A DNA stretch of 64,000 bases from Macrostomum lignano (Eukaryota): positions 248,001 to 312,000 of the forward strand of contig NIVC01000522.1 of assembly GCA_002269645.1 (NCBI GenBank). The letters run 5' to 3'. Position numbers and translations under genes: made by a program. This document shows positions 15,067 through 41,409 of the stretch, piece by piece. A model generated the notes under the pieces. The model was given only the letters and a program-made list of their open reading frames with translations. It did no database searches and was not told the DNA's origin. The stretch's first letter is position 1. Every line of letters starts with the position of its first letter.

Positions 15067-15924
15067 AACATTGAAATTTCAGTAATTCTCTCTAAGAGTC
15101 ACTATAGCACTACTACAGCATTATAGCGATTTCCTGCAAGCCTCGACATCGTAGGGATTCCCAAATGAATCTCTTAACTTCGACATGAAGCTTCTTTTAT
15201 TTTTTACATTACGCTTTTTTTATCAGCGATCCCTCCCCTGAGGAGGCATCAAATAATGTAATAAAAAGTTTTCAATAAACTACATGTAGCTTCTGACTTT
15301 AGCCTTGAAATCTCATTTATACCCCGTGAGCCTTGACATCTCAGCTATTCCCCCCGTAAGCCTTAACATGTCAGCGATGGCCTCCATAAACCTTGAAATC
15401 TAAAAAATCCCCTGTTATTCTGTTAACCTTGAAACCCGATAAAATATAACCCTCAACCCACACCTGACCTAAACCTAACTTTAACCCAACCTAAAGCCTT
15501 GAAATCTCAGCAATTCTTCTCCCCTAAGCCTTTACATTTTAGTGATTCCTTCTTTAAGAATCACAGCACTATAACGATTTCCACCAAGCTTTGACATCGT
15601 AGCAATTCCCAAATGAATCTTTTAACTTGAACATGACTTTTCTTTTATGTATAGCTCGTACATACGCTCGTAGTGCTACTTTTATTTTTTACATGACTCT
15701 TCTTCTATAAGCGCCTCCCGTGGCGAGCCAACAAAGAATGCAATAAAAAAATTGAGTAAAGTACATGAACTTTGAAGTAGCTTCTGACTTTTGCTTTGAC
15801 ATCTCAGAAACCCCCCCCCCCCCGTAATCTCAGCAGTTATTCTCTGAGAGCCTTTACGTCTCAGTTTTTCTCCCCAGCACAGCATTATAGCTGCATTTAA
15901 TTTTTGATTTTTATGATTTTCTAT

Positions 15925-18900
15925 GATTTTTAAATGACGCTTCTACGATTTTTACATGACGCTTCTATGATTTTTTACATGACGCTTCTATGATTTTTTA
16001 CATGACGCTTCTATGATTGTTTACATGACGCTTCTATGATTTTTTAAATGACGCTTCTATGATTGTTTACATGACGCTTCTATGATTGTTTACATGATGC
16101 TTCTATGATTTTTTACATGACGCTTCTATGATTGTTTACATGACGCTTCTATGATTGTTTACATGACGCTTCTATGATTGTTTACATGACGCTTCTATGA
16201 TTCTTTACGTGACGCTTTTATGATTTTCACATGACGCTTCTATGATTTTTTAAATGACGCATCTATGATTTTTATATGACGCTTCTATGATTTTTTTAAA
16301 TGACGCTTCTATGATTGTTTACATGATGCTTCTATGATTTTTTAAATGACGCATCTATGATTTTTTTACATGACGCTTCTATGATTCTTTACATGACGCT
16401 TCTATGATTGTTTACATGACGCTACTATGATTTTTTTACATGATGCTTCTATGATTGTTTACATGACGCTTCTATGATTGTTTACATGACGCTTCTATGA
16501 TTTTTTCATGACGCTTCTGTGATTGTTTACATGCCGCTTCTATGATTGTTTACATGATGCTTTTATGATTGCTTACATGACGCTTCTATAATTGTTTACA
16601 TGACGCTTCTATGATTGTTTACATGACGCTTCTATGATTGCTTACATGACGCTTCTATGATTGTTTACATGACTCTTCTATGATTTTTTACATGACGCTT
16701 CTATGGTTGTTTACATGACGCTTCTATGATTTTTACATGACGCTTCTATGATTTTTTATATGACGCTTCTATGATTTTTTTAAATGATGCATCTATGATT
16801 TTTATATGACGCTTCTATGATTTTTTACATGACGCTTCTATGATTGTTTACATGAGGCTTCCATGATTTTTTAAATGACGCATCTATGATTTTTGCATGA
16901 CGCTTCTATGATTTTTTAAATGACGCTTCTACGATTTTTTACATGACGCTTCTATGATTGTTTACATGACGCTTCTATGATTGTTTACATGACGCTTCTA
17001 TGATTGTTTACATGACGCTTCTATGATTTTTTTACATGACGCTTCTATAATTGTTTACATGACGCTTCTATGATTTTTTACATGACGCTTCTATGATTGT
17101 TTACATGACGCTTCTATGATTGTTTACATGACGCTTCTATGATTCTTTACGTGACGCTTCTATGATTTTCACATGACGCTTCTATGATTGTTTACATGAC
17201 GCTTCCATGATTTTTTAAATGACGCATCTATGATTTTTATATGACGCTTCTATGATTTTTTTAAATGACGCTTCTATGATTGTTTACATGATGCTTCTAT
17301 GATTTTTTAAATGACGCATCTATGATTTTTATATGATGCTTCTATGATTTTTTAAATGACGCTTCTATGATTGTTTACATGATGCTTCTATGCTTTTTTA
17401 AATGACGCATCTATGATTTTTATATGATGCTTCTATGATTTTTTAAATGACGCATCTATGATTTTTAAATGACGCTTCTATAATTTATTATATGACGCTT
17501 CTACGATTTTTTACATGACGCTACTATGATTTTTACATGACGCTTCTTTTAAAAAATTTTACATGACGCTTCTATGATTGTTTACATGACGCTTCCATGA
17601 TTTTTTAAATGACGCATCTATGATTTTTGCATGACGCTTCTATGATTGTTTACATGACGCTTCTATGATTCTTTACGTGACGCTTCTATGATTTTCACAT
17701 GACGCTTCTATGATTGTTTACATGACGCTTCTATGATTGTTTACATGACGCTTCTATGATTCTTTACGTGACGCTTCTATGATTTTCACATGACGCTTCT
17801 ATGATTGTTTACATGACGCTTCCATGATTTTTTAAATGACGCATCTATGATTTTTATATGACGCTTCTATGATTTTTTTAAATGACGCTTCTATGATTGT
17901 TTACATGATGCTTCTATGATTTTTTAAATGACGCATCTATGATTTTTATATGATGCTTCTATGATTTTTTAAATGACGCATCTATGATTTTTATATGACG
18001 CTTCTATGATTGTTTACATGACGCTTCTATGATTCTTTACATGACGCTACTATGATTTTTACATGACGCTTCTTTTTAAAAAGTCTTTTAGTTTTCCTGA
18101 CGTTGAAAAGCTTTAATTAAAAAAATTATACTCTATGAAAATTCGAACCATCGTCGCTGCATTTAGCAGTTCAGTCTGTTCACCTCTAGGCATCTATGAT
18201 GCATCTATGATTTTTATATGACGCTTCTATGATTTTTTACATGACGCTTCTATGATTGTTTACATGATGCTTCTATGATTTTTTAAATGACGCATCTATG
18301 ATTTTTTTACATGACGCTTCTATGATTCTTTACATGACGCTTCTATGATTGTTTACATGACGCTACTATGATTTTTTTACATGATGCTTCTATGATTGTT
18401 TACATGACGCTTCTATGATTGTTTACATGACACTTCTATGATTTTAAAATGACGCTTCTGTAATTGTTTACATGACGCTTCTATGATTGTTTACATGATG
18501 CTTTTATGATTGCTTACATGACGCTTCTATGATTGTTTACATGACGCTTCTATGATTGTTTACATGACGCTTCTATGATTGTTTACATGACGCTTCCATG
18601 ATTTTTTAAATGACGCATCTATGATTTTTGCATGACGCTTCTATGATTTTTTAAATGACGCTTCTACGATTTTTTACATGACGCTTCTATGATTGTTTAC
18701 ATGACGCTTCTATGATTGTTTACATGACGCTTCTATGATTGTTTACATGACGCTTCTATGATTTTTTTACATGACGCTTCTATGATTTTTTAAATGACGC
18801 TTCTACGATTTTTTTACATGACGCTTTTATAATTGTTTACATGACGCTTCTATGATTTTTTACATGACGCTTCTATGATTGTTTACATGACGCTTCTATG

Positions 18901-20215
18901 ATTGTTTACATGACGCTTCTATGATTCTTTACGTGACGCTTCTATGATTTTCACATGACGCTTCTATGATTGTTTACATGACGCTTCCATGATTTTTTAA
19001 ATGACGCATCTATGATTTTTATATGACGCTTCTATGATTTTTTTAAATGACGCTTTTATGATTGTTTACATGATGCTTCTATGATTTTTTAAATGACACA
19101 TCTATGATTTTTATATGATGCTTCTATGATTTTTTAAATGACGCTTCTATGATTGTTTACATGATGCTTCTATGGTTTTTTAAATGACGCATCTATGATT
19201 TTTATATGATGCTTCTATGATTTTTTAAATGACGCATCTATGATTTTTATATGACGCTTCTATAATTTTTTATATGACGCTTCTATGATTTTTTACATGA
19301 CGCTACTATGATTTTTACATGACGCTTCTTTTTAAAAAGTCTTTTAGTTTTCCTGACGTTGAAAAGCTTTAATTAAAAAAATTATACTCTATGAAAATTC
19401 GAACCATCGTCGCTGCATTTAGCAGTTCAGTCTGTTCACCTCTAGGCATCTATGATGCATCTATGATTTTTATATGACGCTTCTATGATTTTTTACATGA
19501 TGCTTCTATGATTGTTTACATGACGCTTCCATGATTTTTTAAATGACGCATCTATGATTTTTGCATGACGCTTCTATGATTTTTTAAATGACGCTTCTAC
19601 GATTTTTTACATGACGCTTCTATGATTGTTTACATGACGCTTCTATGATTGTTTACATGACGCTTCTATGATTGTTTACATGACGCTTCTATGATTTTTT
19701 TACATGACGCTTCTATAATTGTTTACATGACGCTTCTATGATTTTTTACATGACGCTTCTATGATTGTTTACATGACGCTTCTATGATTGTTTACATGAC
19801 GCTTCTATGATTCTTTACGTGACGCTTCTATGATTTTCACATGACGCTTCTATGATTGTTTACATGACGCTTCCATGATTTTTTAAATGACGCATCTATG
19901 ATTTTTATATGACGCTTCTATGATTTTTTTAAATGACACTTCTATGATTGTTTACATGATGCTTCTATGATTTTTTAAATGATGCATCTATGATTTTTAT
20001 ATGATGCTTCTATGATTTTTTAAATGACGCTTCTATGATTGTTTACATGATGCTTCTATGGTTTTTTAAATGACGCATCTATGATTTTTATATGATGCTT
20101 CTATGATTTTTTAAATGACGCATCTATGATTTTTATATGACGCTTCTATAATTTATTATATGACGCTTCTACGATTTTTTACATGACGCTACTATGATTT
20201 TTACATGATGCTTCT
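15925..20215. repeat. About 23-bp satellite (ATGACGCTTCTATGATTGTTTAC) with higher-order duplications
   Basis: Roughly 170-180 units, interrupted at about 18072-18191 and 19328-19447 by copies of the 120-bp sequence that also closes the array at 20213-20333. Confidence 0.97.
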
Positions 20216-27890: not shown

Positions 27891-28631
27891 GTAGGATAAA
27901 ATTCTAATACATGTTTTAGATAAAAATTGCCTGATATCTGTGCAGCACCTTAGCCAATGAGATCAATGCTTAAAGGGGGGCCCGTGGCCTAATAAGGGGG
28001 GGGGCAAGCCCCCCCCCTCTTTGGATGCACCACTGCATGAATGAATGCTTGTTGATAAATGGTAGGTTTAATTATTGCTAATCATTTTTAACTTTATAAC
28101 TTTATTATATTAGATAATTAAAGAACTATTGTTATCATTGGATTATCATTGAAAGTTATGGAGGTTACAAAAAATTCATTTTGAATTAGCTATAATTATA
28201 AGTAGGCTTACAAAGAAATGTAGATATAGTCATAATGAAACTACTTATTTGCATATTTATAAAATATCAAGAAAAAAAACAAAATGACTTGTTTGAAACT
28301 CTCAAAAAATAGGCCTAGAAGTTGCATGACTGATTTTTATAAATGTACAACCTCCCACTGACCAAAAATGCAACTTATCTGTAAAAGAAACATTGGTAAA
28401 CAGCAAGAGTAACATTAGGCTTAAATGCCTCGTCATCTAATTAGCACTACGTCTGTATTTTTGGGTGACTTTAAACTGCAAAACTGCCTATATTTTAACC
28501 TGTAAACTAATTCATTTTCTATTTTAAATTACATTCATGATCGTTAATTAATAAAAGTACATACAGTACCTTGCACCGCAGAAGCAGAGTAAAAAATGCA
28601 GTTAAAGCTGAGCAGACTATTAGGCTTGCAG

Positions 28632-29021
28632 GTGCAAAGTCGAGCCCAAGCATCCTCAGACCAGGAGAAACCAAAGCGAGGTTTAATGACGCCAGACGAG
28701 GCTAAGAAATTATCTGAAGCTCGTCGTTCAATGGACGCCAAACGCAGTGATGCTACTAATAGTAGCAGCAATGCAGACAGCTCTTCCTATGCTGACAGTG
28801 AAGATTCTGTGTGGTTGAGGCGACTTAGGGATAACAAATTTGGCGCCGCCGGTGTTGGCCTGTGGACTGGGCTAGTGGCCTACTACCTAATGCGGGTGCG
28901 CAGTAGGAAGCTGCCGCTGCAGATGTACCTCATCCAGTTGCGAGTTGGCGCCCAAGTGGCCTGCATTGGCTGCATCACGCTGGGTTGCTTCTATGCCGCA
29001 ATTAGCAATCCAAAATCCTAA
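28632..29021 (+). CDS. HIG1 (hypoxia-induced gene 1) domain protein; start either at the acceptor (28632) or at ATG 28686
   Basis: KFGAAGVGLWTGLVAYYL...MYLIQLRVGAQVACIGCITLG matches the two-TM HIG1 domain with its RVxAQ motif. Acceptor ttgcag| at 28631. Confidence 0.85.
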   Translation: MQSRAQASSDQEKPKRGLMTPDEAKKLSEARRSMDAKRSDATNSSSNADSSSYADSEDSVWLRRLRDNKFGAAGVGLWTGLVAYYLMRVRSRKLPLQMYLIQLRVGAQVACIGCITLGCFYAAISNPKS

Positions 29022-29382
29022 TTAGTTTTGTCATCGTTATCCTGACTGGACTACTTTTATGACTATGAATGTATTTTGCTATCTATAGATTAATTTTAAT
29101 TTCGTGTCCCCATCATTGAATCATTTATTTTTTGCCAGAGTTCATAACGCGACATTTGAAATACACATTTTTTAAAAGTACGCAATGAACTATTGGTTGT
29201 TATAAAAATCTAGTGATTTCTGAATGCCTTTAATATTTTTTTTCAAATTACTCGTAGTTACTAGACTAGACAAAACCTACTACTTATTAAGGGAATTGCA
29301 AAGTGCTGCAGAGCGACATAGCAACCAGCTACAATTTGCATTACCTGTTCAATATTTGCAGCCAGCAGTTGAGGCGTATCAA

Positions 29383-29647
29383 ATGGCCAGCTCGCACGCT
29401 CCATTAGTGAATGGCAACAGCAGCGCTCACTCAGCTGCTGACGCCTATCCTAAAGCCATTGTGCCGCCCAATGGCACTAAAATTGGTATTCGCATTGTGC
29501 ATATTGAGAATCTTAACTGCTTCTTTGTGGTTCCGGAAGCTGATCTGGCTAAGCTGGAGAAACTGGTGAGCTGTCAGTGTTTTTGTCTGTCTGTATCTCT
29601 GTATTTATCTGTCTATTTATCTTATCTATCTAATTACCCATCTATCC

Positions 29648-29717
<70 letters not shown>

Positions 29718-29788
29718 TTATCTATCTATTTATCTCTCTAATCACCTATCTATCTATCTGTCTATCTGTCTGTCTATCTATCTATCTG

Positions 29789-29825
<37 letters not shown>

Positions 29826-30047
29826 TTATCTCTCTAATCACCTATCTATCCATCTTTCTATCTATCTGTCTTTCTATCCATCTGTCTATCTATCTATCTA
29901 TCCATCTTTCTATCTATCTGTCTTTCTATCCATCTGTCTATCCATCTGTCTATCTATCTATCTATCTATTTATCTATCTATCTATTTATCTCTCTAATCA
30001 CCTATCTATCCATCTTTCTATCTATCTGTCTATCTATCTATCTATCC

Positions 30048-30097
<50 letters not shown>

Positions 30098-33000
30098 TTA
30101 TCTCTCTAATCACCTATCTATCCATCTTTCTATCTATCTGTCTATTTATATCTATCTATCTATCTATCTATCTGTCTATCTATCTATCTGTCTATCTATA
30201 TCTATCTATCTATTTATCTGTCTATCCATCAATCCATCTATCTATCTATCTGTCAATCTATCTATTTATCTATCTATCTGTCTGTCTATCTATCTGTCTA
30301 TCCATCAATCTATCCAACCCAAACCCTGCTAGGCCCTCTCTCTGAAGTCGGTTGCCATCAAGTCTGAGCCGGCGGAGCCAGCCTGCCTATCCGCCTGCTT
30401 GCTGGCGATGCACCCAGACGACGGTGAGTGGTACCGGGCCGTGGCACTTGATTGGCCCAGGCATTCGGCCTGTTTAGTTCGTTTCATTGACTACGGCAAT
30501 GCCGCCGTTGTCCCGGCCGAGTTTGTTGCCAAGCAACCAAACGGCGCGCAGCTGACGGAGCTGCCGGCTTTCGCAATCGAATGCTCGCTGGCCGGCTGCG
30601 ACCACGCCGACTACGGGCCCGGCGCCTTGGCCAGCTTCCGCAAACTGCTCAACCGGCCTGGCGTGACTGCCGAGATTGCTGTGCCGCCTGTGGCTGGCCA
30701 AGGCGACGAGGACCCGGCCGCAGCAGCCGCCGCCGTTGTTGCCGCCGGTCCAGTCGGCGTTCGACTGTCAATCAACGACATTGACGTGCTTGGCCGCCTG
30801 CCGAAACTGGCCGCTAAGCTGTCACTGCCGCGCCATCGAGTGAAATTATCGCCAGCCGAGGTCAGTGACCTGTGTGGGGAGAATGTGCAGTTATCTACCG
30901 ATTTTTTACACAGCGATCGATCAATCAATCACCATTAAGACAGATGATCAATCAATCACCATTTAAACACTCAGCGATCAATTAATCACTATTCAGACAC
31001 TCAGCGATCAATCAATCAATAAATCAGTCACCATTCAGACACTCAGCGATCAATCAATCACCATTCAGACACTCAGCGATCAATCAATCAATAAATCAGT
31101 CACCATTCAGACACTCAGCGATCAATCAGTCACCATTCAGACACTCAGCGATCAATCAATCACCATTCAGACACTCAGCGATCAATCAATCAATAAATCA
31201 GTCACTATTCAGACACTCAGCGATCAATCAATCACCATTCAGACACTCAGCGATCAATCAATCACCATTCAGACACTCAGCGATCAATCAATCACCATTC
31301 AGACACTCAGCGATCAATCAATCACAACTCAGACACTCAGCGATCAATCAATCACAATTCAGACACTCAGCGATCAATCAATCACAATTCAGACACTCAG
31401 CGATCAATCAATCAATCAATCACCATTCAAGCAGTAACTGATTAATCGAAGAAGTAATACTTATTGATATCTTATCACTATCACCAACTTCCGCAGAACA
31501 TAGTCGACGCTGGCCCATTCGACGCTGTGATCTCTGTGTCTAAACCGGCTGAGGACGGCTCCGGCTCCCTGACGGTCTGGCTGCAGCGCTCCGACCGTCA
31601 GGAGGACCTGCTGCAACTGTCGGAACTGTTGGAACCGGCCGCCGAGTCTTCCACCGGTTTCTCCACCGGCGAACTGATTGCCGGAGACGTGTGCATTGGC
31701 TACTACCTGGAGGGCTGGTACCGCGCTCGCGTGCTGTCCACCGACGAACAGGCTGGCACCGTTGATCTGCTCTATATCGACTATGGCAATGCGGAGACTA
31801 AAAGCTTGCGCGGCACTTTTCAACAGGTGCGTTCTGGGGGAATTCTAGGGGAAATCTCCTGGGGAATCCTTGGGGAATCTCCTGAAGAAATCTAGAGGGA
31901 ATCCTAGGGGAAATCTCTTGGGGAATCCTAGGGGAAATCTCCTGGGGAATCCTAGGGGAAATCTCCCGGGGAATCCTAGGGGAAATCTCCCGGGAAATCC
32001 TAGGGGAAATCCTAGGGGAAATCTCCCGGGAAATCCTAGGGGAAATCTCCCGGGAAATCCTAGGGGAAATCTCCCGGGAAATCCTAGGGGAAATCTCCCG
32101 GGAAATCCTAGGGGAAATCTGCCGGGGAATCCTAGGGGAAATCTGCCGGGGAATCCTAGGGAAAATCTTTCCACAGGGAAATCTGTGGGAATCTCTCGCA
32201 AAATCTTACGTGAAATCTCCTGGGGAATTCAAGAGGAAATCGGTGGGAATCCTAGTGGAAATCTCTTAGGGAATCCTAGGAAAATTTAGGGGAATCCTAG
32301 TAAAAAATCTCTTGGCGAACTCTAGGGGAATTCTCTCAGGAAATTCTTGAAAAAATCTTGGGGAATCCTCGGGAAATCTACAAGCATTCGCAGCTTCAGA
32401 GAAAACGCTCTCTTTGGAAAAAATTACTCAACAAATATTTCTCAACTAATCGCTTCCAAAAACTCTCCGAAATCGCCGCTCAGGTGCGCCGCCTGCCTCC
32501 GGACGCCACCTTCAGCCAGCCAGCACTGGCCCACCCCGCCACCCTGCCGGCGCCGCCGAAGGACGCCCAGCGTCGATTCAAGCCGGACGCTGGCGAACTG
32601 CTTGTCGGACTGACAGAAGAAACAGTCAACGAAGCCGAAGCTGAACCGGAAGCGGAACCAGAAGTCACTCCTAGCGTTCGCGTATCGGTTAGCAGCAGCG
32701 GTATTGTGAAATTCGAAGACCCGACTATCATCGAAACCATCACTGACGCCGTTGAACGCGACGTCATACCGGATTTCGAGGTCGCCTCCGACGGCTCTTT
32801 GGCCGCTTTCGACGCCGTAGTTGTAGTTGCCGACCTGACCGAAGATCGTTGCAGCGCCATGCTGTGGCTTCAGCGCGACTCGGACCAGGAGGCTCTCGCT
32901 GGCATGCAGGAGGCCTTGGAGGCCGCGGCCGCGGATTCCGCCACCGTCGCTGGCCTTGGCATTGAAGATCTCGCCGAAGGTGACGGCTGCATCGGCGTGT

Positions 33001-34139
33001 ACGAAGAGGCTTGGTACAGAGCCCGGGTGCTGTCCCTCAACCCCGTCTCCGTGCTGTTTGTCGACTATGGCAACGTGGAATCGGCGGCAACCCCGGCCGA
33101 GCTGCAGCTTCGTCCGTTGCCGGCCGGCCGAGCCGAGTTTCGAGTTCCCGCCTTTGCTATTCGCTGCCAACTGCGCTGCCCTGTTGAGGGTGGCCGATTC
33201 AAACCGGACGCTGGCGCGGCGCTTGTCGAACGAACGGACGCGTCGGACAAGCCTCTGCTGGTGTCTCTTGAGCTGCCAAGCGATTCGGCTGAGACAGCTG
33301 CACAAGATTTTATTGTCAACTTAGACCAGACTGAGAATGACTTCTTGATGCAGCTGATTGAAACTGACGATGCCGGCAAGGATGCTGGAGGTGACGATGA
33401 AGCCGCTGAAGAGGCTGGAGAAGCTGAAGTTGAATTGAAAACTACTACTGAGACTGGAGCAGAGAATGATGAAGCTATAGCGGAGGCTGGCGACGACTTG
33501 GATGAAACGATCGTTGAAGATGAAGATCAAATATTGCCGGAAGATGCTGACGGTGACAGAGGCAAGCTCAGACTATCCGTTGGCGATACAATCGTTGGTT
33601 GCATTGCTCCTAGGGTCAATGAAAACGATGAAAGCTATGATGATGCAGTGTTTTACGTCAGACGGGAAGATTCAGCCGCGGTGGAAGCTCGAACTGGTTG
33701 CTTAGCCGAGGCTCTGGCTAAAGCCGCTGGTGAGCGGGAAGATGGTGCCAGACTTGATTTCAGCGTTGTAGTAGTAAAGCACCGAGCTCTGATGCGTTCG
33801 CCTGCTACTGATGCTACTGACGACAGTAGTATGCAATTGCGTCGGACTCAAATTGAATCTATCGATGAGCACGGCAAATCGGCGGGTGTTGTACTGATTG
33901 ACGAAGGCTCGGCGGTTGCTGACGCCGATGTTGAACTGTTTCAAGCGATGCCTGAAGCTCTGCAGCTGTCAGCTCTGCCCGCTCTGGCTTGCAGGTGTCA
34001 GTTCGAGTCTGAGCAGGCTGAGGAGAATGAAGCAAACGGCGACATCAATGCGATTAAACGCTTCCTAATTGTTGGTATTGATGAGGATGAAGAGGACTGG
34101 CCTCTATATACAGTTCGGTCTGTTGGTGCTGAAGAATGA
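29383..34139 (+). CDS. Multi-Tudor (extended Tudor, TDRD-like) protein, about 898 aa; exons 29383-29565, 30333-30860, 31497-31826, 32484-34139
   Basis: Three WYRA...[FY][IV]DYGN Tudor cores with LP.FAI.C-type extensions, plus a degenerate fourth. All three introns are GT-AG, phase 0 and frame-consistent. Confidence 0.9.
29580..30315. repeat. (CTAT)n microsatellite filling Tudor intron 1
   Basis: Direct. Confidence 0.97.
30915..31430. repeat. About 30-bp minisatellite (CATTCAGACACTCAGCGATCAATCAATCAC) in Tudor intron 2
   Basis: Direct. Confidence 0.95.
31835..32370. repeat. 24-bp minisatellite (CCTAGGGGAAATCTCCCGGGAAAT) in Tudor intron 3
   Basis: Direct. Confidence 0.95.
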
Positions 34140-35279
34140 TGGAAAAGGCTATATTTGGACAATAATTGACCTTCAGTATCCATTGGCCAGTGAGGTCACA
34201 GGTTGCTCATTAACCATCTGTTCCGTGTTAAGTACCTAATAATTTGAATTTGTCATCTCTTGGAAATTTGCTTTGAGTTTGTTATCAGTATCAGTACCCC
34301 GGTTTATTTGTTTTATTTCTTCCTGCTTTTTTATGCAATCGTCGCATTTTTTGAGTTTAAAGTGCTCCAATATCCCCTAATATTTGTTTATGAATCACCG
34401 ATAATTTTGCCTAATAATATTTGCTTTGTAATCGGGGGATGTGGGATCAGCACTCACATTCATGATCAATAATTGGACGATTATTCAGAAATGTGTGGAC
34501 TAATTCGTCTGATATATGTGACATAACTGGTTAGGTGCATTTAGGATAATTGGTAAATTAGATAATGGTTAGGTAGGTAAGGTGAGATATATAATTGGTC
34601 AGGTAATAGAAATTGATTAGGCAAATGTGAGATAATTGATAATTGGTCAGGTAAAGGTAATAGAATTGGCCAAGTAAATTTATGGCATAATTGGCCAGGT
34701 AAATGTGGTATGATTAGATGAGATAGTTATCTTATTAGGATAACAAGATTGATCGTTAAATGCTTCAAATTGGCATTAGTGGATAGAATACTTAATTGTT
34801 CCTATGATTCATTTTCTTTCCGAAATAAACTTTGCATGGGCGGCAAAAACTCTCTGAAATATTATTAAAAAAACTTTCCTTTTCCAAACTGTTCTTCTGA
34901 AGAGTAACTTCATTGCTATAATTGCATTTAACATGCGTGTAACCCTTGTGTATTTGTAACACAAGCGTGTAGATGGCTAGTAGTCCTATATCAAATTATA
35001 ATATTTTCAACAGTGAAAACACTTCTATAATAGATGCGAACCTTATACGATACAATTAATTCTGTTAATCTACCAAATCCTTGTGCTTCAACCCAACAAT
35101 TATAGTTTTTGGGAAAAATCTTAATAGTACTATAAGCATCTAAATATAAAAACGTTATTAATTAATATATAGTTAATACTTGCAAGTTGCCTGCTTCATG
35201 TTTACAGGAATATGTTTGCTTAGTGCCGGTCTTTGCTTGCTTTTTTATCTGCGTTTCCAGGTATATTTAAGGTGACAGA

Positions 35280-35410
35280 GCTAGGGTTAGACGCTGAATG
35301 AGAGGTATTGCTAAGGCTAGACACTGACTGAGGGGTATTGCTAAGGGTTAGACACTGACTGGGTATTGCTAAGAGTTAGACACCGACTGGGGGGGGCATT
35401 GCTAGGGTTA
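35280..35410. repeat. Short degenerate tandem repeat (CTAAGGGTTAGACACTGACTG..GGGTATTG), about 4 copies
   Basis: Direct. Confidence 0.75.
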
Positions 35411-35552
35411 ATCACAAATATGCTGAAAACGCTTGCAAACATCAGACAAGCTTAAATGAGACAATCCTTTTTATTAGCCACATCGCCTCCTCATAGTAGC
35501 CTGGCGGCATTCAAACTACGTAAAAAACGCAATTGTTTGTTGCAACTCGCAG

Positions 35553-38500
35553 GCCGATAAAAGTCCGCCTCAGGAGGGGGCTGCCGCGGCGGAAATCCCG
35601 GATGATGAAGAGCGATCGAAATCGCCCATATTTGTTTCGCATTACCTGGCCGTACCGAAGGTTGCGAGAATTGGCGGCCTTGCTGCTACTAGAGGAAGAG
35701 AAGATTCGAGTAGTTCCGCCGATGGCCCTCGGGTCTGTCGGTCCAAAATGCAGCTGATGAACGTTGATCACGGTGCTGAAGGGACTGCTGCTGCTCCAAT
35801 TGCTTCTATTAGAAGTAGACAGGAGTCTAGCCAACTTAGTGAAAAGTGAGCTGGTCTCTGGATTGTTTTGAGGGCTCATTAATGGCTTCTAGCGCAGAGA
35901 ATCAAGCCCATCTCACCTCAAGAATCTCCCACCACACCCCAAGAATCTCCCATCCCCAACCCCAAGAATCTCCCATCCCCAACCCCAAGAATCTCCCATC
36001 CCCAACCCCAAGAATCTCTTATCTCACCGCAGGAATCTCCCACCACACCCCAAAAAGCTCCCATCTCACTCCAAGAATCTCCCACCACACCCCAAGAAGC
36101 TCCCATCTCACTCCAAGAATCTCCCACCACACCCCAAGAAGCTCCCATCTCACTCCAAGAATCTCCCACCACACCCCAAGAATCTTCCATCTCACCCCAA
36201 GAATCTCCAACCCCACCTCAAGAATCTCTCATCTCACCTCAAGAATCTCCAACCCCAACTCAAGAATCTCCCATCCCCAACCTCAAGAATCTCCCACCAC
36301 ACCCCAAGAATCTTCCATCTCACCCCAAGAATCTCCAACCCCACCTCAAGAATCTCTCATCTCACCTCAAGAATCTCCAATCCCACCTCAAGAATCTCCC
36401 ATCCCCAACCTCAAGAATCTCCCATCCCAACCCCAAGAATCTCCCATCCCAACCCCAAGAATCTCCAACCCCACCTCAAGAATCTCCCATCCCCAACCTC
36501 AAGAATCTCCTATTCCCAACCTCAAGAATCTCCCATCCCCAACCTCAAGAATCTCCCATTCCCAACCTCAAGAATCTCCCATCCCCAACCTCAAGAATCT
36601 CCCATTCCCAACCTCAAGAATCTCCCATCCCCAACCTCAAGAATCTCCCATCCCAACCCCAAGAATCTCCAACCCCACCTATAGAATCTCCCATCCCCAA
36701 CCTCAAGAATCTCCCATTCCCAACCTCAAGAATCTCCCATCCCCAACCTCAAGAATCTCCCATTCCCAACCTCAAGAATCTCCCATCCCCAACCTCAAGA
36801 ATCTCCCATTCCCAACCTCAAGAATCTCCCATCCCCAACCTCAAGAATCTCCCATTCCCAACCTCAAGAATCTCCCACCACACCCTAAGAATCTCCCATC
36901 CCCAACCTCAAGAATCTCCCACCACACCCTAAGAATCTCCCATTCCCAACCTCAAGAATCTCCCATCCCCAACCTCAAGAATCTCCCATTCCCAACCTAA
37001 GAATCTCCCATCCCCAACCTCAAGAATCTCCCATTCCCAACCTCAAGAATCTCCCACCACACCCTAAGAATCTCCCATCCCCAACCTCAAGAATCTCCCA
37101 CCACACCCTAAGAATCTCCCATCCCCAACCTCAAGAATCTCCCATTCCCAACCTCAAGAATCTCCCACCACACTCCAAGAATTTCCCACCACACCCCAAG
37201 AATCTTCCATCTCACCCCAAGAATCTCCAACCCCACCTCAAGAATCTCCCATCCCAACCCCAAGAATCTCCAACCCCACCTCAAGAATCTCTCATCTCAC
37301 CTCAAGAATCTCCCATCCCCAACCTCAAGAATCTCCCATCCCAACCCCAAGAATCTCCCATCCCCACCTTTAAAATGGTTTCTCGCACACACTGAATTCC
37401 CCAGAGACTGGGAGCTCAGCTGGGACTGGGCCGCCGCCGACGCCCAAGATCCGTCAACCCCGTCGGTGAAACTCGCCAGAATTGATTCAACAGTAGCCGC
37501 TGCGGCTGCCGTGTCATTGGAGGCGTTCGCGTCTTTGGATGCCGCGGCGGTTGAAGAACAGCTGGCTTCGGGGGCGGATGACGCCGCCCAGAGGACTTTG
37601 GGGGCGGATGACGCCGCCCAGATGACTGCAGGGGCGGATGACGCCGCCCAGAGGACTTTGGGGGCGGATGACGCCGCCCAGAGGACTTTGGAGGCGGATG
37701 ACGCCGCCCAGAGGACTTTGGGGGCGGATGACGCCGCCCAGAGGACTTTAGGGGCGGATGACGCCGCCCAGAGGACTTTGGGGGCGGATGACGCCGCCCA
37801 GAGGACTGCAGGGGCGGATGACGCCGCCCAGAGGACTGCAGGGGCGGATGACGCCGCCCAGAGGACTTTGGGGGCGGATGACGCCGCCCAGAGGACTGCA
37901 GGGGCGGATGACGCCGCCCAGAGGACTGCAGGGGCGGATGACGCCGCCCAGAGGACTGCAGGGGCGGATGACGCCGCCCAGAGGACTGCAGGGGCGGATG
38001 ACGCCGCCCAGAGGACTGCAGGGGCGGATGACGCTGCCACAGTCGGTGTATCAGCAGCGGACGAGCTCCGCGCTCTATACAACTCGTTGAACCCCAGCAG
38101 CTCGCGGCCCCCAGCCGAGCTGTCAGCATTCACTCTGGTTCGCGATAGCAACTACTTTCGTGGCTGTAAATTCTCTCCCGATGGGCTCTGCCTGTTGACA
38201 AATTCGGCAGATAATCAGCTTCGACTGTTTAATATGCCGCGATTGAACGAATCCGAAGCTGCTGAAGGTGGCTGGCAGCCTGTGCTGAACATGCCCGAGT
38301 CTGATCTGATCTACGATATGTGCTGGTAGGTTTGACAAATCTGCAACGGAAGAATTACCCCTGAAATAATCGTTTAATAATCGCCTCTAAAAGAATCGCT
38401 TCTCAATAAATTGAATCTTGAATATTTTTCGAAGAATCGCCCCCACCTTCAGAAAATCACCTCTTAAGAATCGCCCTCCCCTCAGATTCTCGCCCTCTCA

Positions 38501-41409
38501 GAGAATCGCCCTGCAAAGAATCGCCCCCCCCTCAGAGAATCGCCCCCTCCCCCTCAGAGAATCGCCCCCTCCCCCTCAGAGAATCGCCCCCTCCCCCTCA
38601 GAGAATCGCCCCCCCCCCTCAGAGAATCGCCCCCTCCCCCTCAGAGAATCGCCCCCCCCCTCAGAGAATCGCCCCCCCCTCAGAGAATCGCCCCCCCCCA
38701 GAGAATCGCCCCCCCTCAGAGAATCGCCCCCCCCTCAGAGAATCGCTTTCCCAGAAAATTGCCTCTGAAAACTTTGACTGCTTACAACACCATCGAGCCC
38801 CCTTTATCCGCCAATGCGCCCAACAATCGCAGGTATCCCAGCATGAATTCGGCCGATCCGGACACCTGCTGTTTCGCCGCTTGCTCCAGAGACAATCCTG
38901 TCCGACTGTGGGACGCCTTCACTGGCCAGCAGAGGGCGCAGTATGCGCCTTATAATCATCTGGACGAGCTGCAGGTGAGATTCTGCATAGGGTGAGAGAT
39001 CTCTATGGAATTGGGTCCCTGATTCTGTGGCATAGAATAAGATCTCGTAGCTTATGATGGGATCTCATGGCATGGGTGATTCCATTTCTTTTTCTAAGGA
39101 TCTTACGGTATTCGTGTCGGACGCAAACCAATATATTGTTATATGGTTGAGATCTCGGCACAGGCTGAGATCTCATGACATCAGGTAAGATCTAATGTAA
39201 TGAAATTGAAGAAGATACCATAGCGTATGATAAGATCTCATAGCATTTGAGTGAGTTCCCACCGCGTATGGTGAGATCTCATTGCATTTTAATGAGTTCC
39301 CACCGCGTATGGTGAGATCTCATGGCATTTGAGTGAGTTCCCACCGCGTATGGTGAGATCTCATAGGAGTCATAGCGTATGAGCTCTCATAGCAGATACT
39401 ATTCTCCCTAAAAACTGACCCACTCCAGGCGCCCTACAGCCTGGCGTTCAGCCCCGACGGTAGTCGGCTCTACTGCGGCTTCGAGCGACATTTGCGCGTG
39501 TTCGACATCCACCGCCCGGGCAAGCAGTCGGAGCGGCGGCCTCGGATCGGTGTGAAGCCAAGCCAAGGCGGCATCATCGCCGCTCTGGCCTGCACCCCTG
39601 CCAGGCCTGGGGTGTACGCCTGCGGCAGCTACAACCGCACCGTGTGCCTGTTTGCCGAGCCCGGCTCTATGCTGGCCTGCATGCGGGGCCAGGTCAGTGC
39701 GGGGATCGAATCCAATGGGGATTTCTATGGTCACTGGGGTAGGGATCAGAAAATTGAGGATTTTAGAATTTTGGGATCTGGAGAGAAGAATCGGGAAATT
39801 GGATTTAAGGATCTGAATTGGGAAATGGGATTTGAGGATGTGGAATGGAAAATGGGATTTGAAGATGTGGAATGGAAAATGGGATTTGAAGATGTGGAAT
39901 GGAAAATGGGATTTGAAGATCTGGAATGGGAAATGGGATTTGAGGATCTGGAATGGGAAATGGGATTTGAGGATCTGAAATGGGATTTGAAGATCTGGAA
40001 TTGGAAATTCCAATGGGATTTCGGGATCTGTAATGAAATGAAATTTCATGATTTGCAATGGGAAATCGGATTTGAGGATCTGAAATGGGAAATCGGATTT
40101 GAGGATCTGGAATCGGAAATGAGATTTGAGGATCTGGAATGGGAAATGGGATTTGAGGATCTGGAATGGGAAATGGGATTTGAGGATCTGGAATGGGATT
40201 TGAAGATCTGGAATGGGAAATGCCAATGGGATTTGAGGATCTGTAATGAAATGAAATTTCATGATTTGCAATGGGAAATCGGATTTGAGGATCTGAAATG
40301 GGAAATCGGATTTGAGGATCTGGAATCGGAAATGAGATTTGAGGATCTGGAATGGGAAATGGGATTTGAGGATCTGGAATGGGAAATGGGATTTGAGGAT
40401 CTGGAATGGGATTTGAAGATCTGGAATGGGAAATGCCAATGGGATTTGAGGATCTGTAATGAAATGAAATTTCATGATTTGCAATGGGAAATCGGATTTG
40501 AGGATCTGAAATGGGAAATCGGATTTGAGGATCTGGAATCGGAAATGAGATTTGAGGATCTGGAATGGGAAATGGGATTTGAGGATCTGGAATGGGAAAT
40601 GGGATTTGAGGATCTGGAATCGGAAATGAGATTTGAGGATCTGGAATGGGAAATGGGATTTGAGGATCTGGAATGGGAAATGGGATTTGAGGATCTGGAA
40701 TGGGAAATTTGATATTTGAATTCGAGGATCTGGAATCTGGATCTAGGGCTAGAAAAATGAAACTGGAGTTTAAGTATAGATATCTTAACAAAAGAATTAA
40801 ACAAATTTGCGGATCTAGGCAGAAAAATAGGGGAAAAGGATTCCGGATTCGGAAAGACACAATGCGATGCTCAAACACTATCCGCTCTGGTGTCGCTCGC
40901 ACACGCAGCTCGGCGGCGTCACCCAGCTGCAGTTCTCGCCGTGCGGCAATCTGCTATACAGCGGCGGCCGCAAAGATCCCGAGATTCACTGCTGGGATGT
41001 CCGGCGTCCCGGAGTGATCCTGGCCACAATGCGCCGGGTTGTGGCCACCAATCAGCGGCTGCAGTTCGATCTGGATCCGGGCGGCCGCTACCTGCTCAGC
41101 CCCTGCTACACTGGCCGAGTTCGGGTATTCGATTTGAAGACTCCGCCAGCGCCGACCAATTGCGAGATCAACTATTGCGCCGAATGGCAGGCGCACGCCG
41201 ACGCTTGCAACACGGTGTCGCTCAGTCCCACCTGTCCGGTTCTGGCCACCTGTTCCGGCCAGCGCCACATCCGTTCAATGCTAGCTGACGCCAGTTCGTC
41301 CAGTTCGTCAACTTACAGCGAAGACGAGACCGATCAGAATGTTGAAAATCGATTGCGACTGTTTAGTCTGTCCACCTGCTTGGATAACAGCAGGTTCGCT
41401 GCTAATTGA
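35553..41409 (+). CDS. WRAP53: WRAP53/TCAB1 (telomerase Cajal body WD40 protein); exons 35553-35845, 37405-38325, 38833-38974, 39429-39692, 40909-41409; start codon uncertain
   Basis: NYFRGCKFSPDGLCLLTNSADN, WDAFTG...YNHLDEL, SLAFSPDG, GGRKDPEIHCWDVR and TNQRLQFDLDP match WRAP53. Intron phases 2, 2, 0, 0 join consistently. The first in-frame genomic ATG is at 35748. Confidence 0.92.
35895..37365. repeat. About 21-bp C/A-rich minisatellite (CAAGAATCTCCCATCCCAACC) in WRAP53 intron 1
   Basis: Direct. Confidence 0.95.
37571..38038 (+). repeat. Coding 30-bp repeat encoding GADDAAQRT[L/A], 15 full copies plus 1 partial
   Basis: Lies inside the WRAP53 exon, in frame with the WD40 region. Confidence 0.92.
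38430..38750. repeat. CAGAGAATCGCCCCCCCT minisatellite in WRAP53 intron 2
   Basis: Direct. Confidence 0.92.
39160..39380. repeat. About 40-bp repeat (GAGTTCCCACCGCGTATGGTGAGATCTCAT..), 3 clear copies, in WRAP53 intron 3
   Basis: Direct. Confidence 0.8.
39800..40740. repeat. TTTGAGGATCTGGAATGGGAAATGGGA-type minisatellite with higher-order blocks in WRAP53 intron 4
   Basis: Direct. Confidence 0.95.

What the first reader, a model, noticed from the sequence alone, without database searches (positions are those of the whole stretch)
28630..35845. Candidate HIG1-Tudor-WRAP53 operon with acceptors in frame for an SL-supplied AUG
Seen: three consecutive + strand genes each begin at a 3' splice acceptor with no obvious upstream donor (28631, 29361, 35552). 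In each case the first base after AG is codon position 1 of the gene's frame: VQSRAQ... (18 codons before the first ATG), PAVEAYQM (7 codons) and ADKSPPQEGAAAAEIPDDEE... (65 protein-like codons before the first in-frame ATG, with out-of-frame ATGs inside). Rab24 is the same (ag|ATT TGT GTG ATG). By contrast, the acceptors before G-gamma (10 nt) and USP (7 nt), which have visible cis donors, and before CTSO (10 nt) are out of frame. Gaps are about 340 bp (HIG1 stop to Tudor acceptor) and about 1.4 kb. Known: flatworm spliced leaders end in AUG, which can serve as initiator Met, and SL-resolved operons occur in Macrostomum. Inference: a polycistron linking a mitochondrial factor, a piRNA/germline-type Tudor protein and the telomerase/scaRNA chaperone, with WRAP53 lacking its own start codon. 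Four in-frame cases have about 1% chance probability, but they were noticed post hoc.
Basis: partly seen in the sequence, partly recalled or inferred. Interest (0 to 1): 0.8.

Follow-up and report, generated by a model that had tools for sequence, protein, structure and literature searches.

The report
Flatworm operon with leader-supplied start codon
This stretch of the flatworm Macrostomum lignano holds three head-to-tail genes already annotated as one transcription unit. Two of them get their 5' ends by spliced-leader trans-splicing, and one (telomerase chaperone WRAP53/TCAB1) probably takes its start codon from the leader, a mechanism known in flatworms since 2006.

Summary
The window is Macrostomum lignano Mlig_3_7, NIVC01000522.1 (contig position = window + 248000).

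- **Tudor (ag|29362): supported.** The GenBank CDS is 5'-partial and starts exactly there. A paralog is published as TRANSSPLICED. Two paralogs carry spliced-leader (SL) bases just upstream of the junction, apparently from RNA-seq polishing.
- **WRAP53 (ag|35553): supported.** The next in-frame ATG is codon 66, behind three out-of-frame ATGs.
- **HIG1 (ag|28632): not supported.** The annotated CDS starts at an ATG at 28596, 36 nt upstream and in the same frame, and reads through the AG.

The three genes share the transcriptional-unit prefix Mlig002182, and their neighbours do not. Spacing fits the published operon rule.

The "1%" figure is post hoc: 4 of 7 sites in frame gives P = 0.17.

No reads were available, so use of the SL AUG for WRAP53 is inferred, at about 0.55.

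SL operons in M. lignano and SL-AUG initiation in flatworms are both published. This is a new member of a known kind and of modest interest.

The parts
28596..29021 (+). HIG1-domain gene. The CDS as annotated in GenBank is 141 aa (MQLKLSRLLGLQ|VQSRAQ...), single exon, with the stop at 29019-29021.
   Evidence: The exact 141-aa protein is on record for this contig and for the 488 paralog. Pfam HIG_1_N E=2.6e-7. The ATG is conserved in paralogs.
28630..28631 (+). It fits the YTNCAG motif and is in frame, but it lies inside the annotated CDS.
   Evidence: The annotation reads through it. No evidence of use was available.
29022..29361 (+). HIG1 3'UTR plus the HIG1-Tudor spacer (340 nt). Only variant poly(A)-like hexamers are present, at 29160, 29184 and 29201.
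   Evidence: The length is below the published 1-kb operon threshold.
29360..29361 (+). Tudor SL trans-splice acceptor AG (atatttgcag|CCAGCAG). The first mRNA base is 29362.
   Evidence: The GenBank partial CDS starts at 29362. Paralog g121 is flagged TRANSSPLICED. Paralogs show SL-derived bases at -4..-2, and the genome was polished with RNA-seq.
29362..34139 (+). Multi-Tudor gene (GenBank Mlig002182.g132). Exons are 29362-29565, 30333-30860, 31497-31826 and 32484-34139. Its own ATG is at 29383, and the 7 codons before it are open and in frame with an SL AUG.
   Evidence: The model equals GenBank PAA81584.1 exactly. Pfam Tudor, three matched stretches.
34140..35220 (+). Inferred Tudor 3'UTR of about 1.08 kb. 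The end is approximate.
   Evidence: The published g121 transcript length is 3799 nt and the CDS is 2718 nt. The end was mapped from the paralog to the window by alignment. AATATA/TATAAA hexamers lie at 35143-35164.
35280..35410 (+). A 30-nt tandem repeat in the Tudor-WRAP53 spacer. It is expanded by about 0.7 kb in the 488 and 594 paralogs.
35551..35552 (+). WRAP53 acceptor AG (gttgcaactcgcag|GCCGAT). The first mRNA base is 35553. It is conserved in all four genomic copies.
   Evidence: The UniRef A0A1I8H575 model starts ADKSPP. GenBank PAA81585.1 starts DKSPP. The fused WormBase ParaSite models use the same acceptor.
35553..35845 (+). WRAP53 exon 1. Codons 1-65 (35553-35747) have no ATG in frame. 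In-frame ATGs are at 35748 and 35757. Out-of-frame ATGs at 35602, 35605 and 35722 all stop at 35755. The donor is AA|gtgagc.
   Evidence: Codon-usage score is +6.9 in frame 0, above all 72 non-coding windows and all 5000 shuffles. The exon 1/2 junction SEK|DWELSW is present in the annotated proteins.
37405..41409 (+). WRAP53/TCAB1 exons 2-5: 37405-38325, 38833-38974, 39429-39692 and 40909-41409 (stop at 41407-41409).
   Evidence: Human TCAB1 E=4.4e-96. Agrees with GenBank and UniRef proteins except for repeat number.
37571..38038 (+). In-frame 30-nt tandem repeat (GADDAAQRT[L/A], 15.6 copies) inside WRAP53 exon 2. Annotated proteins carry fewer copies (595 and 652 aa, against 706 aa read from the genome).

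Best explanation
Window 28.6-41.4 kb is one Macrostomum lignano transcriptional unit (TU cluster Mlig002182).

- **HIG1, first gene.** It has its own ATG at 28596 and probably its own promoter.
- **Multi-Tudor gene.** It follows after at most 340 nt and is neoblast-enriched.
- **TCAB1/WRAP53.** It follows about 330 nt after the inferred Tudor poly(A) site.

The Tudor and WRAP53 mRNAs get their 5' ends by trans-splicing of the 35-nt SL (ending ...TTGCATG) onto ag|29362 and ag|35553.

At both junctions the SL's terminal AUG is in frame with an open reading frame.
- For Tudor this adds at most Met plus 7 residues ahead of the gene's own Met, so it is dispensable.
- For WRAP53 the SL AUG is the first AUG of the mRNA and the only one that opens the whole annotated ORF (M-ADKSPPQEG...). 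It is therefore the most likely initiator.

**Shown:** the sequence anatomy, the annotated 5' ends, the published TRANSSPLICED flag for Tudor, and the shared TU prefix.

**Inferred:** SL addition at 35553, co-transcription from one promoter, and translation from the SL AUG.
For: - **Organism and contig.** L003 matches window 18596-39021 exactly. The top WRAP53 hit is M. lignano.
- **SL sequence, acceptor motif, operon rule.** PMC8629364.
- **Tudor.**
  - The GenBank CDS 29362..34139 is flagged 'partial' and begins PAVEAYQM.
  - Mlig002182.g121 is listed as {TRANSSPLICED} and 'Neoblast, stringent'.
  - The paralogs differ from the window only at -4..-2 of the junction, and every change is to the SL base: GCAG to CATG in one copy and GCTG in another.
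  - The assembly was Pilon-polished with RNA-seq.
- **WRAP53.**
  - GenBank PAA81585.1 is 'partial' and starts DKSPP at 35556. UniRef A0A1I8H575 starts ADKSPP at 35553.
  - The acceptor is conserved in four copies.
  - Exon 1 joins exon 2 in frame.
  - The 65 codons before M66 are open, and frame 0 scores as coding.
  - Three out-of-frame AUGs precede M66.
- **Polycistron.**
  - HIG1 (g53), Tudor (g52, g121, g132) and WRAP53 (g122, g134, g144) share the TU-cluster prefix. Numbering is consecutive in two copies: g52/g53 and g121/g122.
  - The prefix is defined as a cd-hit cluster of assembled transcriptional units.
  - The neighbouring CPEB-like and cathepsin genes have other prefixes.
  - Spacers are at most 340 nt and about 330 nt.
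- **SL AUG as initiator.** Established in flatworms (Cheng 2006, as cited).
Against: - No read-level data could be reached, so SL addition at 35553 rests on annotation boundaries.
- GenBank starts the WRAP53 CDS 3 nt after the acceptor, and this offset is unexplained. One possibility is that one extra G was trimmed with the SL.
- An in-frame AUG with a good context (aaaATGc) exists at codon 66, and everything conserved in TCAB1 lies downstream of it.
- The N-terminal 65 residues have no detectable homolog.
- Paralog divergence in exon 1 (3 changes in 195 nt, 2 of them non-synonymous) cannot separate coding from non-coding.
- StringTie/TACO transcriptional units can merge neighbouring genes through read-through.
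- The prefix Mlig002182 runs to at least g144, so the cluster is large, and I could not see why.
Confidence: 0.6

Rival explanations
1. WRAP53 is trans-spliced at 35553, but translation starts at the internal AUG 35748 (M66) or 35757 (M69). The first 195 nt would then be 5'UTR, and the open frame is a coincidence or a minor N-terminal isoform.
For: - M66 has A at -3. The SL AUG has U at -3 (sequence).
- All TCAB1 homology lies downstream.
- The N-terminus has no homologs.
- The out-of-frame uORF ends in UGAUG, overlapping M69, which would allow re-initiation.
- The 488 and 594 paralogs are annotated from an even later Met.
Against: - The SL AUG is the first AUG, about 32 nt from the cap, in frame and followed by G at +4.
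- Three out-of-frame AUGs would have to be bypassed.
- The 65 codons are stop-free, and their codon usage is better than every non-coding control.
- Two annotation pipelines called the region coding.
Confidence: 0.28
2. The acceptor at 35553 is mainly a cis-splice acceptor. WRAP53 exon 1 would be joined to an upstream exon, either an unannotated 5' exon with its own ATG or the Tudor last exon, giving a Tudor-WRAP53 fusion.
For: WormBase ParaSite models A0A1I8G0R2 (...TVRS|ADKSPP) and A0A1I8I0I7 (...LYT|ADKSPP) join GT donors in the Tudor last exon to this acceptor, in frame. Sharing of acceptors between cis- and trans-splicing is reported in flatworms.
Against: - The two fused models use different weak donors (GTTGGT, GTTCGG), as expected from a predictor rescuing an ORF that has no start codon.
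- A third model from the same source, and GenBank, start at the acceptor.
- Tudor has its own stop and a roughly 1.1-kb 3'UTR in the published transcript.
Confidence: 0.1
3. The locus is not an operon. The three genes are independently transcribed neighbours, and the shared transcriptional unit is an assembly merge caused by read-through or overlapping coverage. SL trans-splicing here serves monocistronic mRNAs.
For: About 60% of SL trans-spliced M. lignano genes are not in operons. The authors note that RNA-seq transcriptional units are imperfect around repeats. The spacer is expanded to about 1.2 kb by repeats in the 488 copy. The prefix cluster is unexpectedly large.
Against: All three genes are on the same strand with short repeat-adjusted spacers, and the downstream genes start at acceptors. 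The TU prefix is shared by these three genes and not by the flanking genes. The authors interpret such units as precursor mRNAs.
Confidence: 0.25
4. HIG1 is also trans-spliced at ag|28632, giving M-VQSRAQ... The annotated upstream ATG would belong to an outron.
For: The site matches the published YTNCAG acceptor motif, is in frame and open, and is conserved in paralogs.
Against: - The annotation pipeline cuts at detected SL peaks, yet it left the CDS starting at 28596, reading through the AG.
- The 12 extra residues form a positively charged, acid-free N-terminus: 3 K/R and 0 D/E in the first 20.
- The exact M-VQSRAQ product is not on record.
Confidence: 0.2

Closest known systems
SL trans-spliced operons / polycistronic 'transcriptional units' of Macrostomum lignano (Wudarski 2017, PMC5730564; Ustyantsev & Berezikov 2021, PMC8629364)
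   Same: Same organism and same assembly. The genes are on one strand and the downstream genes start at SL acceptors. Spacers are well under 1 kb after repeat adjustment. The genes carry one TU-cluster prefix. The Tudor gene is already flagged TRANSSPLICED and neoblast-enriched.
   Different: Nothing differs in kind. This particular unit (HIG1-Tudor-WRAP53) is not singled out in the papers I could read. I could not see the authors' operon list or the SL-read track.
Flatworm SL 3'-terminal AUG as initiator methionine (Cheng et al. 2006, J Biol Chem 281:733; 'slORFs', PMC9851317)
   Same: The SL ends in AUG. The acceptor is in frame with an ORF that has no AUG of its own at the 5' end. The expected product is Met plus the exon-encoded sequence.
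   Different: The mechanism was described in Schistosoma mansoni, where more than 40 cDNAs need the SL AUG. I found no report for M. lignano or for TCAB1/WRAP53. Translation was not tested here.
Telomerase Cajal body protein 1 (TCAB1/WRAP53/WDR79)
   Same: The WD40 propeller aligns to human TCAB1 residues 146-484 at E=4.4e-96. The N-terminus is long and non-conserved, as in other animals.
   Different: The N-terminal region carries a 30-nt in-frame tandem repeat (about 16 copies of GADDAAQRT[L/A]). The genomic ORF has no initiator ATG before codon 66.
C. elegans SL2-type operons
   Same: A polycistronic precursor is resolved by 3' end formation and trans-splicing about 100-400 nt downstream.
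   Different: M. lignano has a single SL with no SL1/SL2 specialisation (PMC8629364). The nematode SL does not end in AUG.

Membership tests
M. lignano SL-resolved operon (criteria of PMC8629364) | Adjacent genes on the same strand, not interrupted by an opposite-strand gene | tested here: met
   HIG1 28596-29021, Tudor 29362-34139 and WRAP53 35553-41409 are all on the + strand with no called gene between them.
M. lignano SL-resolved operon (criteria of PMC8629364) | The downstream gene(s) are SL trans-spliced | tested here: inconclusive
   Tudor: met through the published TRANSSPLICED flag for paralog g121, a CDS starting at ag|29362, and the SL footprint in paralogs. WRAP53: inferred only, from Met-less annotated starts at 35553 and 35556. 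No SL reads could be accessed.
M. lignano SL-resolved operon (criteria of PMC8629364) | Repeat-adjusted intergenic distance below 1 kb | tested here: met
   HIG1 stop to Tudor acceptor is 340 nt. The inferred Tudor poly(A) site (about 35220) to the WRAP53 acceptor is about 330 nt, of which 131 nt is tandem repeat. Measured from the Tudor stop codon instead it is 1413 nt.
M. lignano SL-resolved operon (criteria of PMC8629364) | One precursor RNA from one promoter | not testable with these tools
   Indirect only: the TU-cluster prefix Mlig002182 is shared by the three genes and not by the flanking genes.
SL-AUG-initiated ORF (Cheng 2006; slORF) | The SL of the species ends in AUG | tested here: met
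   The SL is CGGTCTCTTACTGCGAAGACTCAATTTATTGCATG (PMC8629364).
SL-AUG-initiated ORF (Cheng 2006; slORF) | The first base after the acceptor is codon position 1 of the main ORF, with no stop before the conserved part | tested here: met
   WRAP53: 35553 is in frame, and the frame stays open through exon 1 and into exon 2. Tudor: 7 open codons precede its own ATG.
SL-AUG-initiated ORF (Cheng 2006; slORF) | The mature mRNA has no other AUG that could open the full ORF (dependence on the SL AUG) | tested here: inconclusive
   WRAP53 has no in-frame AUG before codon 66, and three out-of-frame AUGs come first. A protein starting at M66 would still hold the whole WD40 domain. Tudor and Rab24 have their own AUGs 7 and 3 codons downstream, so they are not dependent.
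SL-AUG-initiated ORF (Cheng 2006; slORF) | Translation demonstrably starts at the SL AUG | not testable with these tools
   This needs ribosome profiling, N-terminal proteomics or reporters.
TCAB1/WRAP53 | WD40 propeller orthologous to TCAB1 | tested here: met
   PDB 7bgb_K, Telomerase Cajal body protein 1: E=4.4e-96, query 196-530 aligned to chain 146-484. The top database hits are all TCAB1.
HIG1 domain family | HIG_1_N domain | tested here: met
   PF04588, 31.2 bits against a cut-off of 22.4, full-length match 2-52 of 52.
Tudor/TDRD proteins | Extended Tudor domains | tested here: met
   PF00567, three matched stretches, E=3e-42. Published annotation gives TDRD1-like / 'Tudor domain-containing 6'. 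A piRNA role was not tested.

The most novel reading that the evidence does not exclude
M. lignano TCAB1/WRAP53 has no usable genomic start codon and depends entirely on the SL's AUG. Production of the telomerase/scaRNP chaperone would then be gated by trans-splicing of a precursor shared with a neoblast-specific Tudor protein, giving a stem-cell operon whose last cistron is untranslatable unless it is trans-spliced.
Probability: 0.3. Interest if true: 0.45.

Novelty: new member of a known kind. Interest (0 to 1): 0.25.

Why it matters
- **For annotation.** Many M. lignano GenBank proteins flagged "partial" may be complete once the SL's AUG is added. WRAP53 (PAA81585.1) and the Tudor protein (PAA81584.1) are concrete cases.
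- **For biology.** This would be the first named SL-AUG-dependent gene in the one flatworm where transgenesis allows a direct test. It also links a neoblast-enriched Tudor gene and the telomerase chaperone in one transcription unit.
- **For assembly users.** The SL-derived bases found upstream of the Tudor junction in paralogs suggest that RNA-seq polishing can overwrite genomic acceptors and create false ATGs.
- **Limits.** None of this changes what is known about how trans-splicing works.

Tried and rejected
- **WRAP53 exon-1 peptide search.** No hits. The reason became clear later: only cluster representatives are indexed. The window's 595-aa protein sits in a cluster led by a Tudor protein, and a further exon-1-bearing model sits under a 332-aa representative.
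- **HIG1 141-aa search.** No hits, so nothing on conservation of its N-terminus.
- **Exhaustive HMMER search with the WRAP53 N-terminal 153 aa.** The only hit is a spurious tandem-repeat protein.
- **Exact look-ups of SL-Met versions of HIG1 and Tudor.** Neither product is on record. Across, no near-identical hit from a public sequencing-run assembly turned up for any of these genes, so the database gave no transcript-level evidence.
- **Coding constraint from paralogs.** Exon 1 has only 5 substitutions (2 synonymous, 3 non-synonymous). Divergence of 1.5% falls between coding (0.4-1.0%) and non-coding (3.2-3.6%), so there is no power.
- **Single-base deletions in exon 1 of the 2246 and 594 copies.** I first read these as frameshifts arguing against coding. 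I rejected that reading because the same copies carry 1-nt indels in conserved WD40 exons near contig ends, which points to assembly errors.
- **SL sequence in the window.** There is no SL RNA gene, and no SL footprint at the three window acceptors.
- **Rfam and tRNA scans.** Nothing found.
- **Supplementary tables.** Only the Tudor paralog row was found. WRAP53 and HIG1 rows were not in the stored parts.

Full report
**Where the window comes from.** A search with the spliced WRAP53 model returned a Macrostomum lignano GenBank protein at about 100% identity. The locus fetched for the HIG1 protein, NIVC01000522.1:266596-287021 of assembly GCA_002269645.1 (Mlig_3_7), matches window 18596-39021 base for base. 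Contig position is therefore window position + 248000. Three further genomic copies were fetched: NIVC01000488.1 (L001/L004), NIVC01000594.1 (L002) and NIVC01002246.1 (L005). They are 96-99% identical to the window in unique sequence. The DV1 line's assembly is known to be highly duplicated.

**Check of the observation.**
- ggcttgcag|GTG CAA... reads VQSRAQ, with 18 codons before an ATG.
- atatttgcag|CCA GCA... reads PAVEAYQ-M.
- aactcgcag|GCC GAT... reads ADKSPPQEGAAAAEIPDDEE, with 65 open codons before the first in-frame ATG at 35748.
- Out-of-frame ATGs lie at 35602, 35605 and 35722, and all end at a TGA at 35755.

Canonical GT-AG gene models close in frame.
- Tudor has four exons and gives 905 aa counted from the acceptor.
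- WRAP53 has five exons and gives 706 aa.
- Exon 1 (phase 2) joins exon 2 at cccag|A to give ...SQLSEK-DWELSWDW.

Identities hold: HIG_1_N, a Tudor domain with three matched stretches, and human TCAB1 at E=4.4e-96. The gaps are 340 nt and 1413 nt. Rab24 on the minus strand and CTSO are as described.

**What the public annotation says about the three 5' ends.** The GenBank annotation of this assembly comes from a pipeline (TBONE) that cuts assembled "transcriptional units" (TUs) at peaks of SL-containing reads and at poly(A) sites, then calls ORFs with TransDecoder. A CDS flagged "partial" that begins at the first base after an AG therefore records a trans-splice site.
- **Tudor.** The CDS is 29362..34139, 905 aa, "partial", starting PAVEAYQM. 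It is identical to my model.
- **WRAP53.** PAA81585.1 is 595 aa, "partial", and starts DKSPPQEG at 35556. An independent WormBase ParaSite/UniRef model (A0A1I8H575) starts ADKSPPQEG, exactly at 35553. Neither has a Met.
- **The 3-nt offset in GenBank is unexplained.** The first exon base G equals the first intron base of the SL RNA gene (GTAAG). Over-trimming by one base would produce this offset, but that is conjecture.
- **HIG1.** The CDS is 28596..29021, 141 aa. That ATG is conserved in the paralogs. The extra residues make a basic, acid-free N-terminus.

So two of the three "genes beginning at an acceptor" are supported and one is not. Trans-splicing at 28632 cannot be excluded, because it fits the YTNCAG motif.

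**Independent support for the Tudor junction.**
- Supplementary data of Grudniewska et al. 2018 list the 488-copy paralog as [quoted passage not shown], in the class "Neoblast, stringent".
- The paralogs differ from the window immediately upstream of the junction. The window has TTTGCAG|CCAGCAG, the 488 copy has TTTCATG|CCAGCAG, and the 2246 copy has TTTGCTG|CCAGCAG.
- Every one of the four changed bases equals the SL base at that position (SL ...TTGCATG).
- Mlig_3_7 was polished with Pilon using RNA-seq as well as DNA reads.
- The local sequence AATATTTGCAG resembles the SL end AATTTATTGCATG, so SL-bearing reads could align through the junction.
- I read these changes as footprints of SL|CCAGCAG reads. 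They are accidental evidence for the junction and also an assembly artefact, since the 488 copy now shows a false genomic ATG in frame.

**Is it a polycistron?** The locus tags share one prefix.
- HIG1 paralog: Mlig002182g53.
- Tudor: g52, g121 and g132 (window).
- WRAP53: g122, g134 (window) and g144.

The prefix is the cd-hit (95%) cluster of assembled transcriptional units, before cutting into genes. Members must match the cluster representative over their whole length. At least one assembled unit must therefore span HIG1 to WRAP53.

As a control, the minus-strand CPEB-like gene downstream carries Mlig009704, and the next plus-strand gene (cathepsin) carries Mlig016924.

Spacing also fits. 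The published transcript length (3799 nt) minus the CDS (2718 nt) puts the Tudor poly(A) site near window 35220. That is about 330 nt before the WRAP53 acceptor, and 131 nt of it is a tandem repeat. The HIG1 stop lies 340 nt before the Tudor acceptor. Both are well inside the 1-kb repeat-adjusted threshold used to call M. lignano operons, in which 18% of operons start with a non-trans-spliced gene.

Two WormBase ParaSite models fuse Tudor to WRAP53 through weak GT donors in the Tudor last exon and the same acceptor. They are either rare cis-spliced read-through products or a predictor's rescue of an ORF with no start. I give them little weight.

Co-transcription is thus likely and matches how the authors interpret such units. 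It is not shown here, and transcriptional units can be assembly merges.

**Does WRAP53 use the SL's AUG?**

In favour:
- The M. lignano SL ends in ATG. It would be the first AUG of the mRNA, about 32 nt from the cap, followed by G at +4, and in frame with an ORF open all the way into the WD40 domain.
- The 65 codons before M66 score +6.9 with a codon table built from solid CDS in the window. Frame 0 is the best of the three frames. The score exceeds all 5000 shuffles and all 72 non-coding windows (best-of-three maximum -1.5). It is low compared with true CDS windows (23.5 +/- 9.5).
- A ribosome that skipped the SL AUG would meet three out-of-frame AUGs before M66.

Against:
- M66 has a better -3 base.
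- All homology to TCAB1 lies downstream.
- The N-terminal segment has no detectable relatives.
- Paralog comparison has no power: 3 changes in 195 nt, with frameshifting 1-nt deletions only in copies that also carry such deletions in conserved WD40 exons, which points to assembly errors.

I put SL-AUG initiation at roughly 0.55-0.6.

For Tudor and Rab24 the in-frame SL AUG sits 7 and 3 codons before a genomic AUG and is not needed.

**Statistics.** Dropping HIG1 gives 3 of 6 and P = 0.32. In S. mansoni the SL AUG is in frame with 28% of trans-spliced transcripts (Cheng et al. 2006, as quoted), which is about chance. There is no evidence here for a frame bias. The WRAP53 case stands on its own anatomy.

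**Comparison with what is known.**
- SL trans-splicing, a single AUG-ending SL and operons are published for M. lignano. About 30% of genes are trans-spliced and 15% lie in operons.
- Use of the flatworm SL AUG as initiator, with more than 40 S. mansoni cDNAs depending on it, has been known since 2006.
- I found no paper naming this unit or an SL-AUG-dependent gene in M. lignano.

The finding is therefore a new, plausible member of a known kind. It explains why two GenBank proteins here are labelled "partial".

**Verdict.** Interest is 0.25. The decisive test is trivial with data I could not reach: SL-read starts at contig positions 276632, 277362 and 283553, followed by a check of the WRAP53 N-terminus by proteomics, ribosome profiling or a reporter.

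Noticed in passing
L004:10771-10774 and L005:9995-9998 (the paralog bases that align to window 29358-29361): The four bases upstream of the Tudor SL junction read GCAG in the window, CATG in the 488 copy and GCTG in the 2246 copy. All changes are towards the SL 3' end (…GCATG). The assembly was Pilon-polished with RNA-seq. This is probably an SL-read polishing artefact that destroys the acceptor and creates a false in-frame ATG.
   Followed up: partly
window 37571-38038: An in-frame 30-nt tandem repeat (15.6 copies, 94% identical) encodes GADDAAQRT[L/A] inside WRAP53 exon 2. Annotated proteins keep only about 4-8 in-frame copies (595 and 652 aa, against 706 aa from the genome), and the ML2-based model reads further copies in a shifted frame.
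   Followed up: partly
window 29594-30314, 30918-31429, 31837-32280, 35915-37366, 38509-38746, 39788-40708: Almost every intron of the Tudor and WRAP53 genes is filled by a different tandem repeat: (TATC) x181, and units of 30, 24, 23 (x66), 22 and 27 nt. Copy numbers differ between the genomic copies.
   Followed up: no
L005:15846-20184 and L002:1-5838: Single-base indels, nearly all deletions, occur in paralog copies near contig ends, including inside conserved WD40 exons. They look like consensus errors. They may explain why WRAP53 is annotated there only from an internal Met (332 aa).
   Followed up: partly
These may be internal SL sites that remove the start codon out of frame, or imprecise boundary calls.
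   Followed up: no
window 35602-35759: The out-of-frame uORF in WRAP53 exon 1 (from ATG 35602/35605) ends at TGA 35755-35757, which overlaps the in-frame ATG at 35757 (UGAUG). This arrangement could allow termination-reinitiation.
   Followed up: no
window 27975-28020: A G/C-run element (ggggggcccgtggcctaataagggggggggcaagccccccccctc) lies about 600 nt upstream of the HIG1 ATG, in otherwise AT-rich sequence. Its nature is unknown.
   Followed up: no
window 788-799, minus strand: ATTTATTGTATG matches the last 12 nt of the SL with one mismatch. About 0.3 such matches are expected by chance in the window. It could be another SL footprint, or chance.
   Followed up: no
window 15700-20200: A long array of roughly 23-nt repeats (…TCTATGATTTTTTACATGACGCT…) lies upstream. 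No gene is called in the 10 kb before HIG1 in this copy. In the 488 copy the Rab gene lies only about 6.6 kb upstream of HIG1.
   Followed up: no
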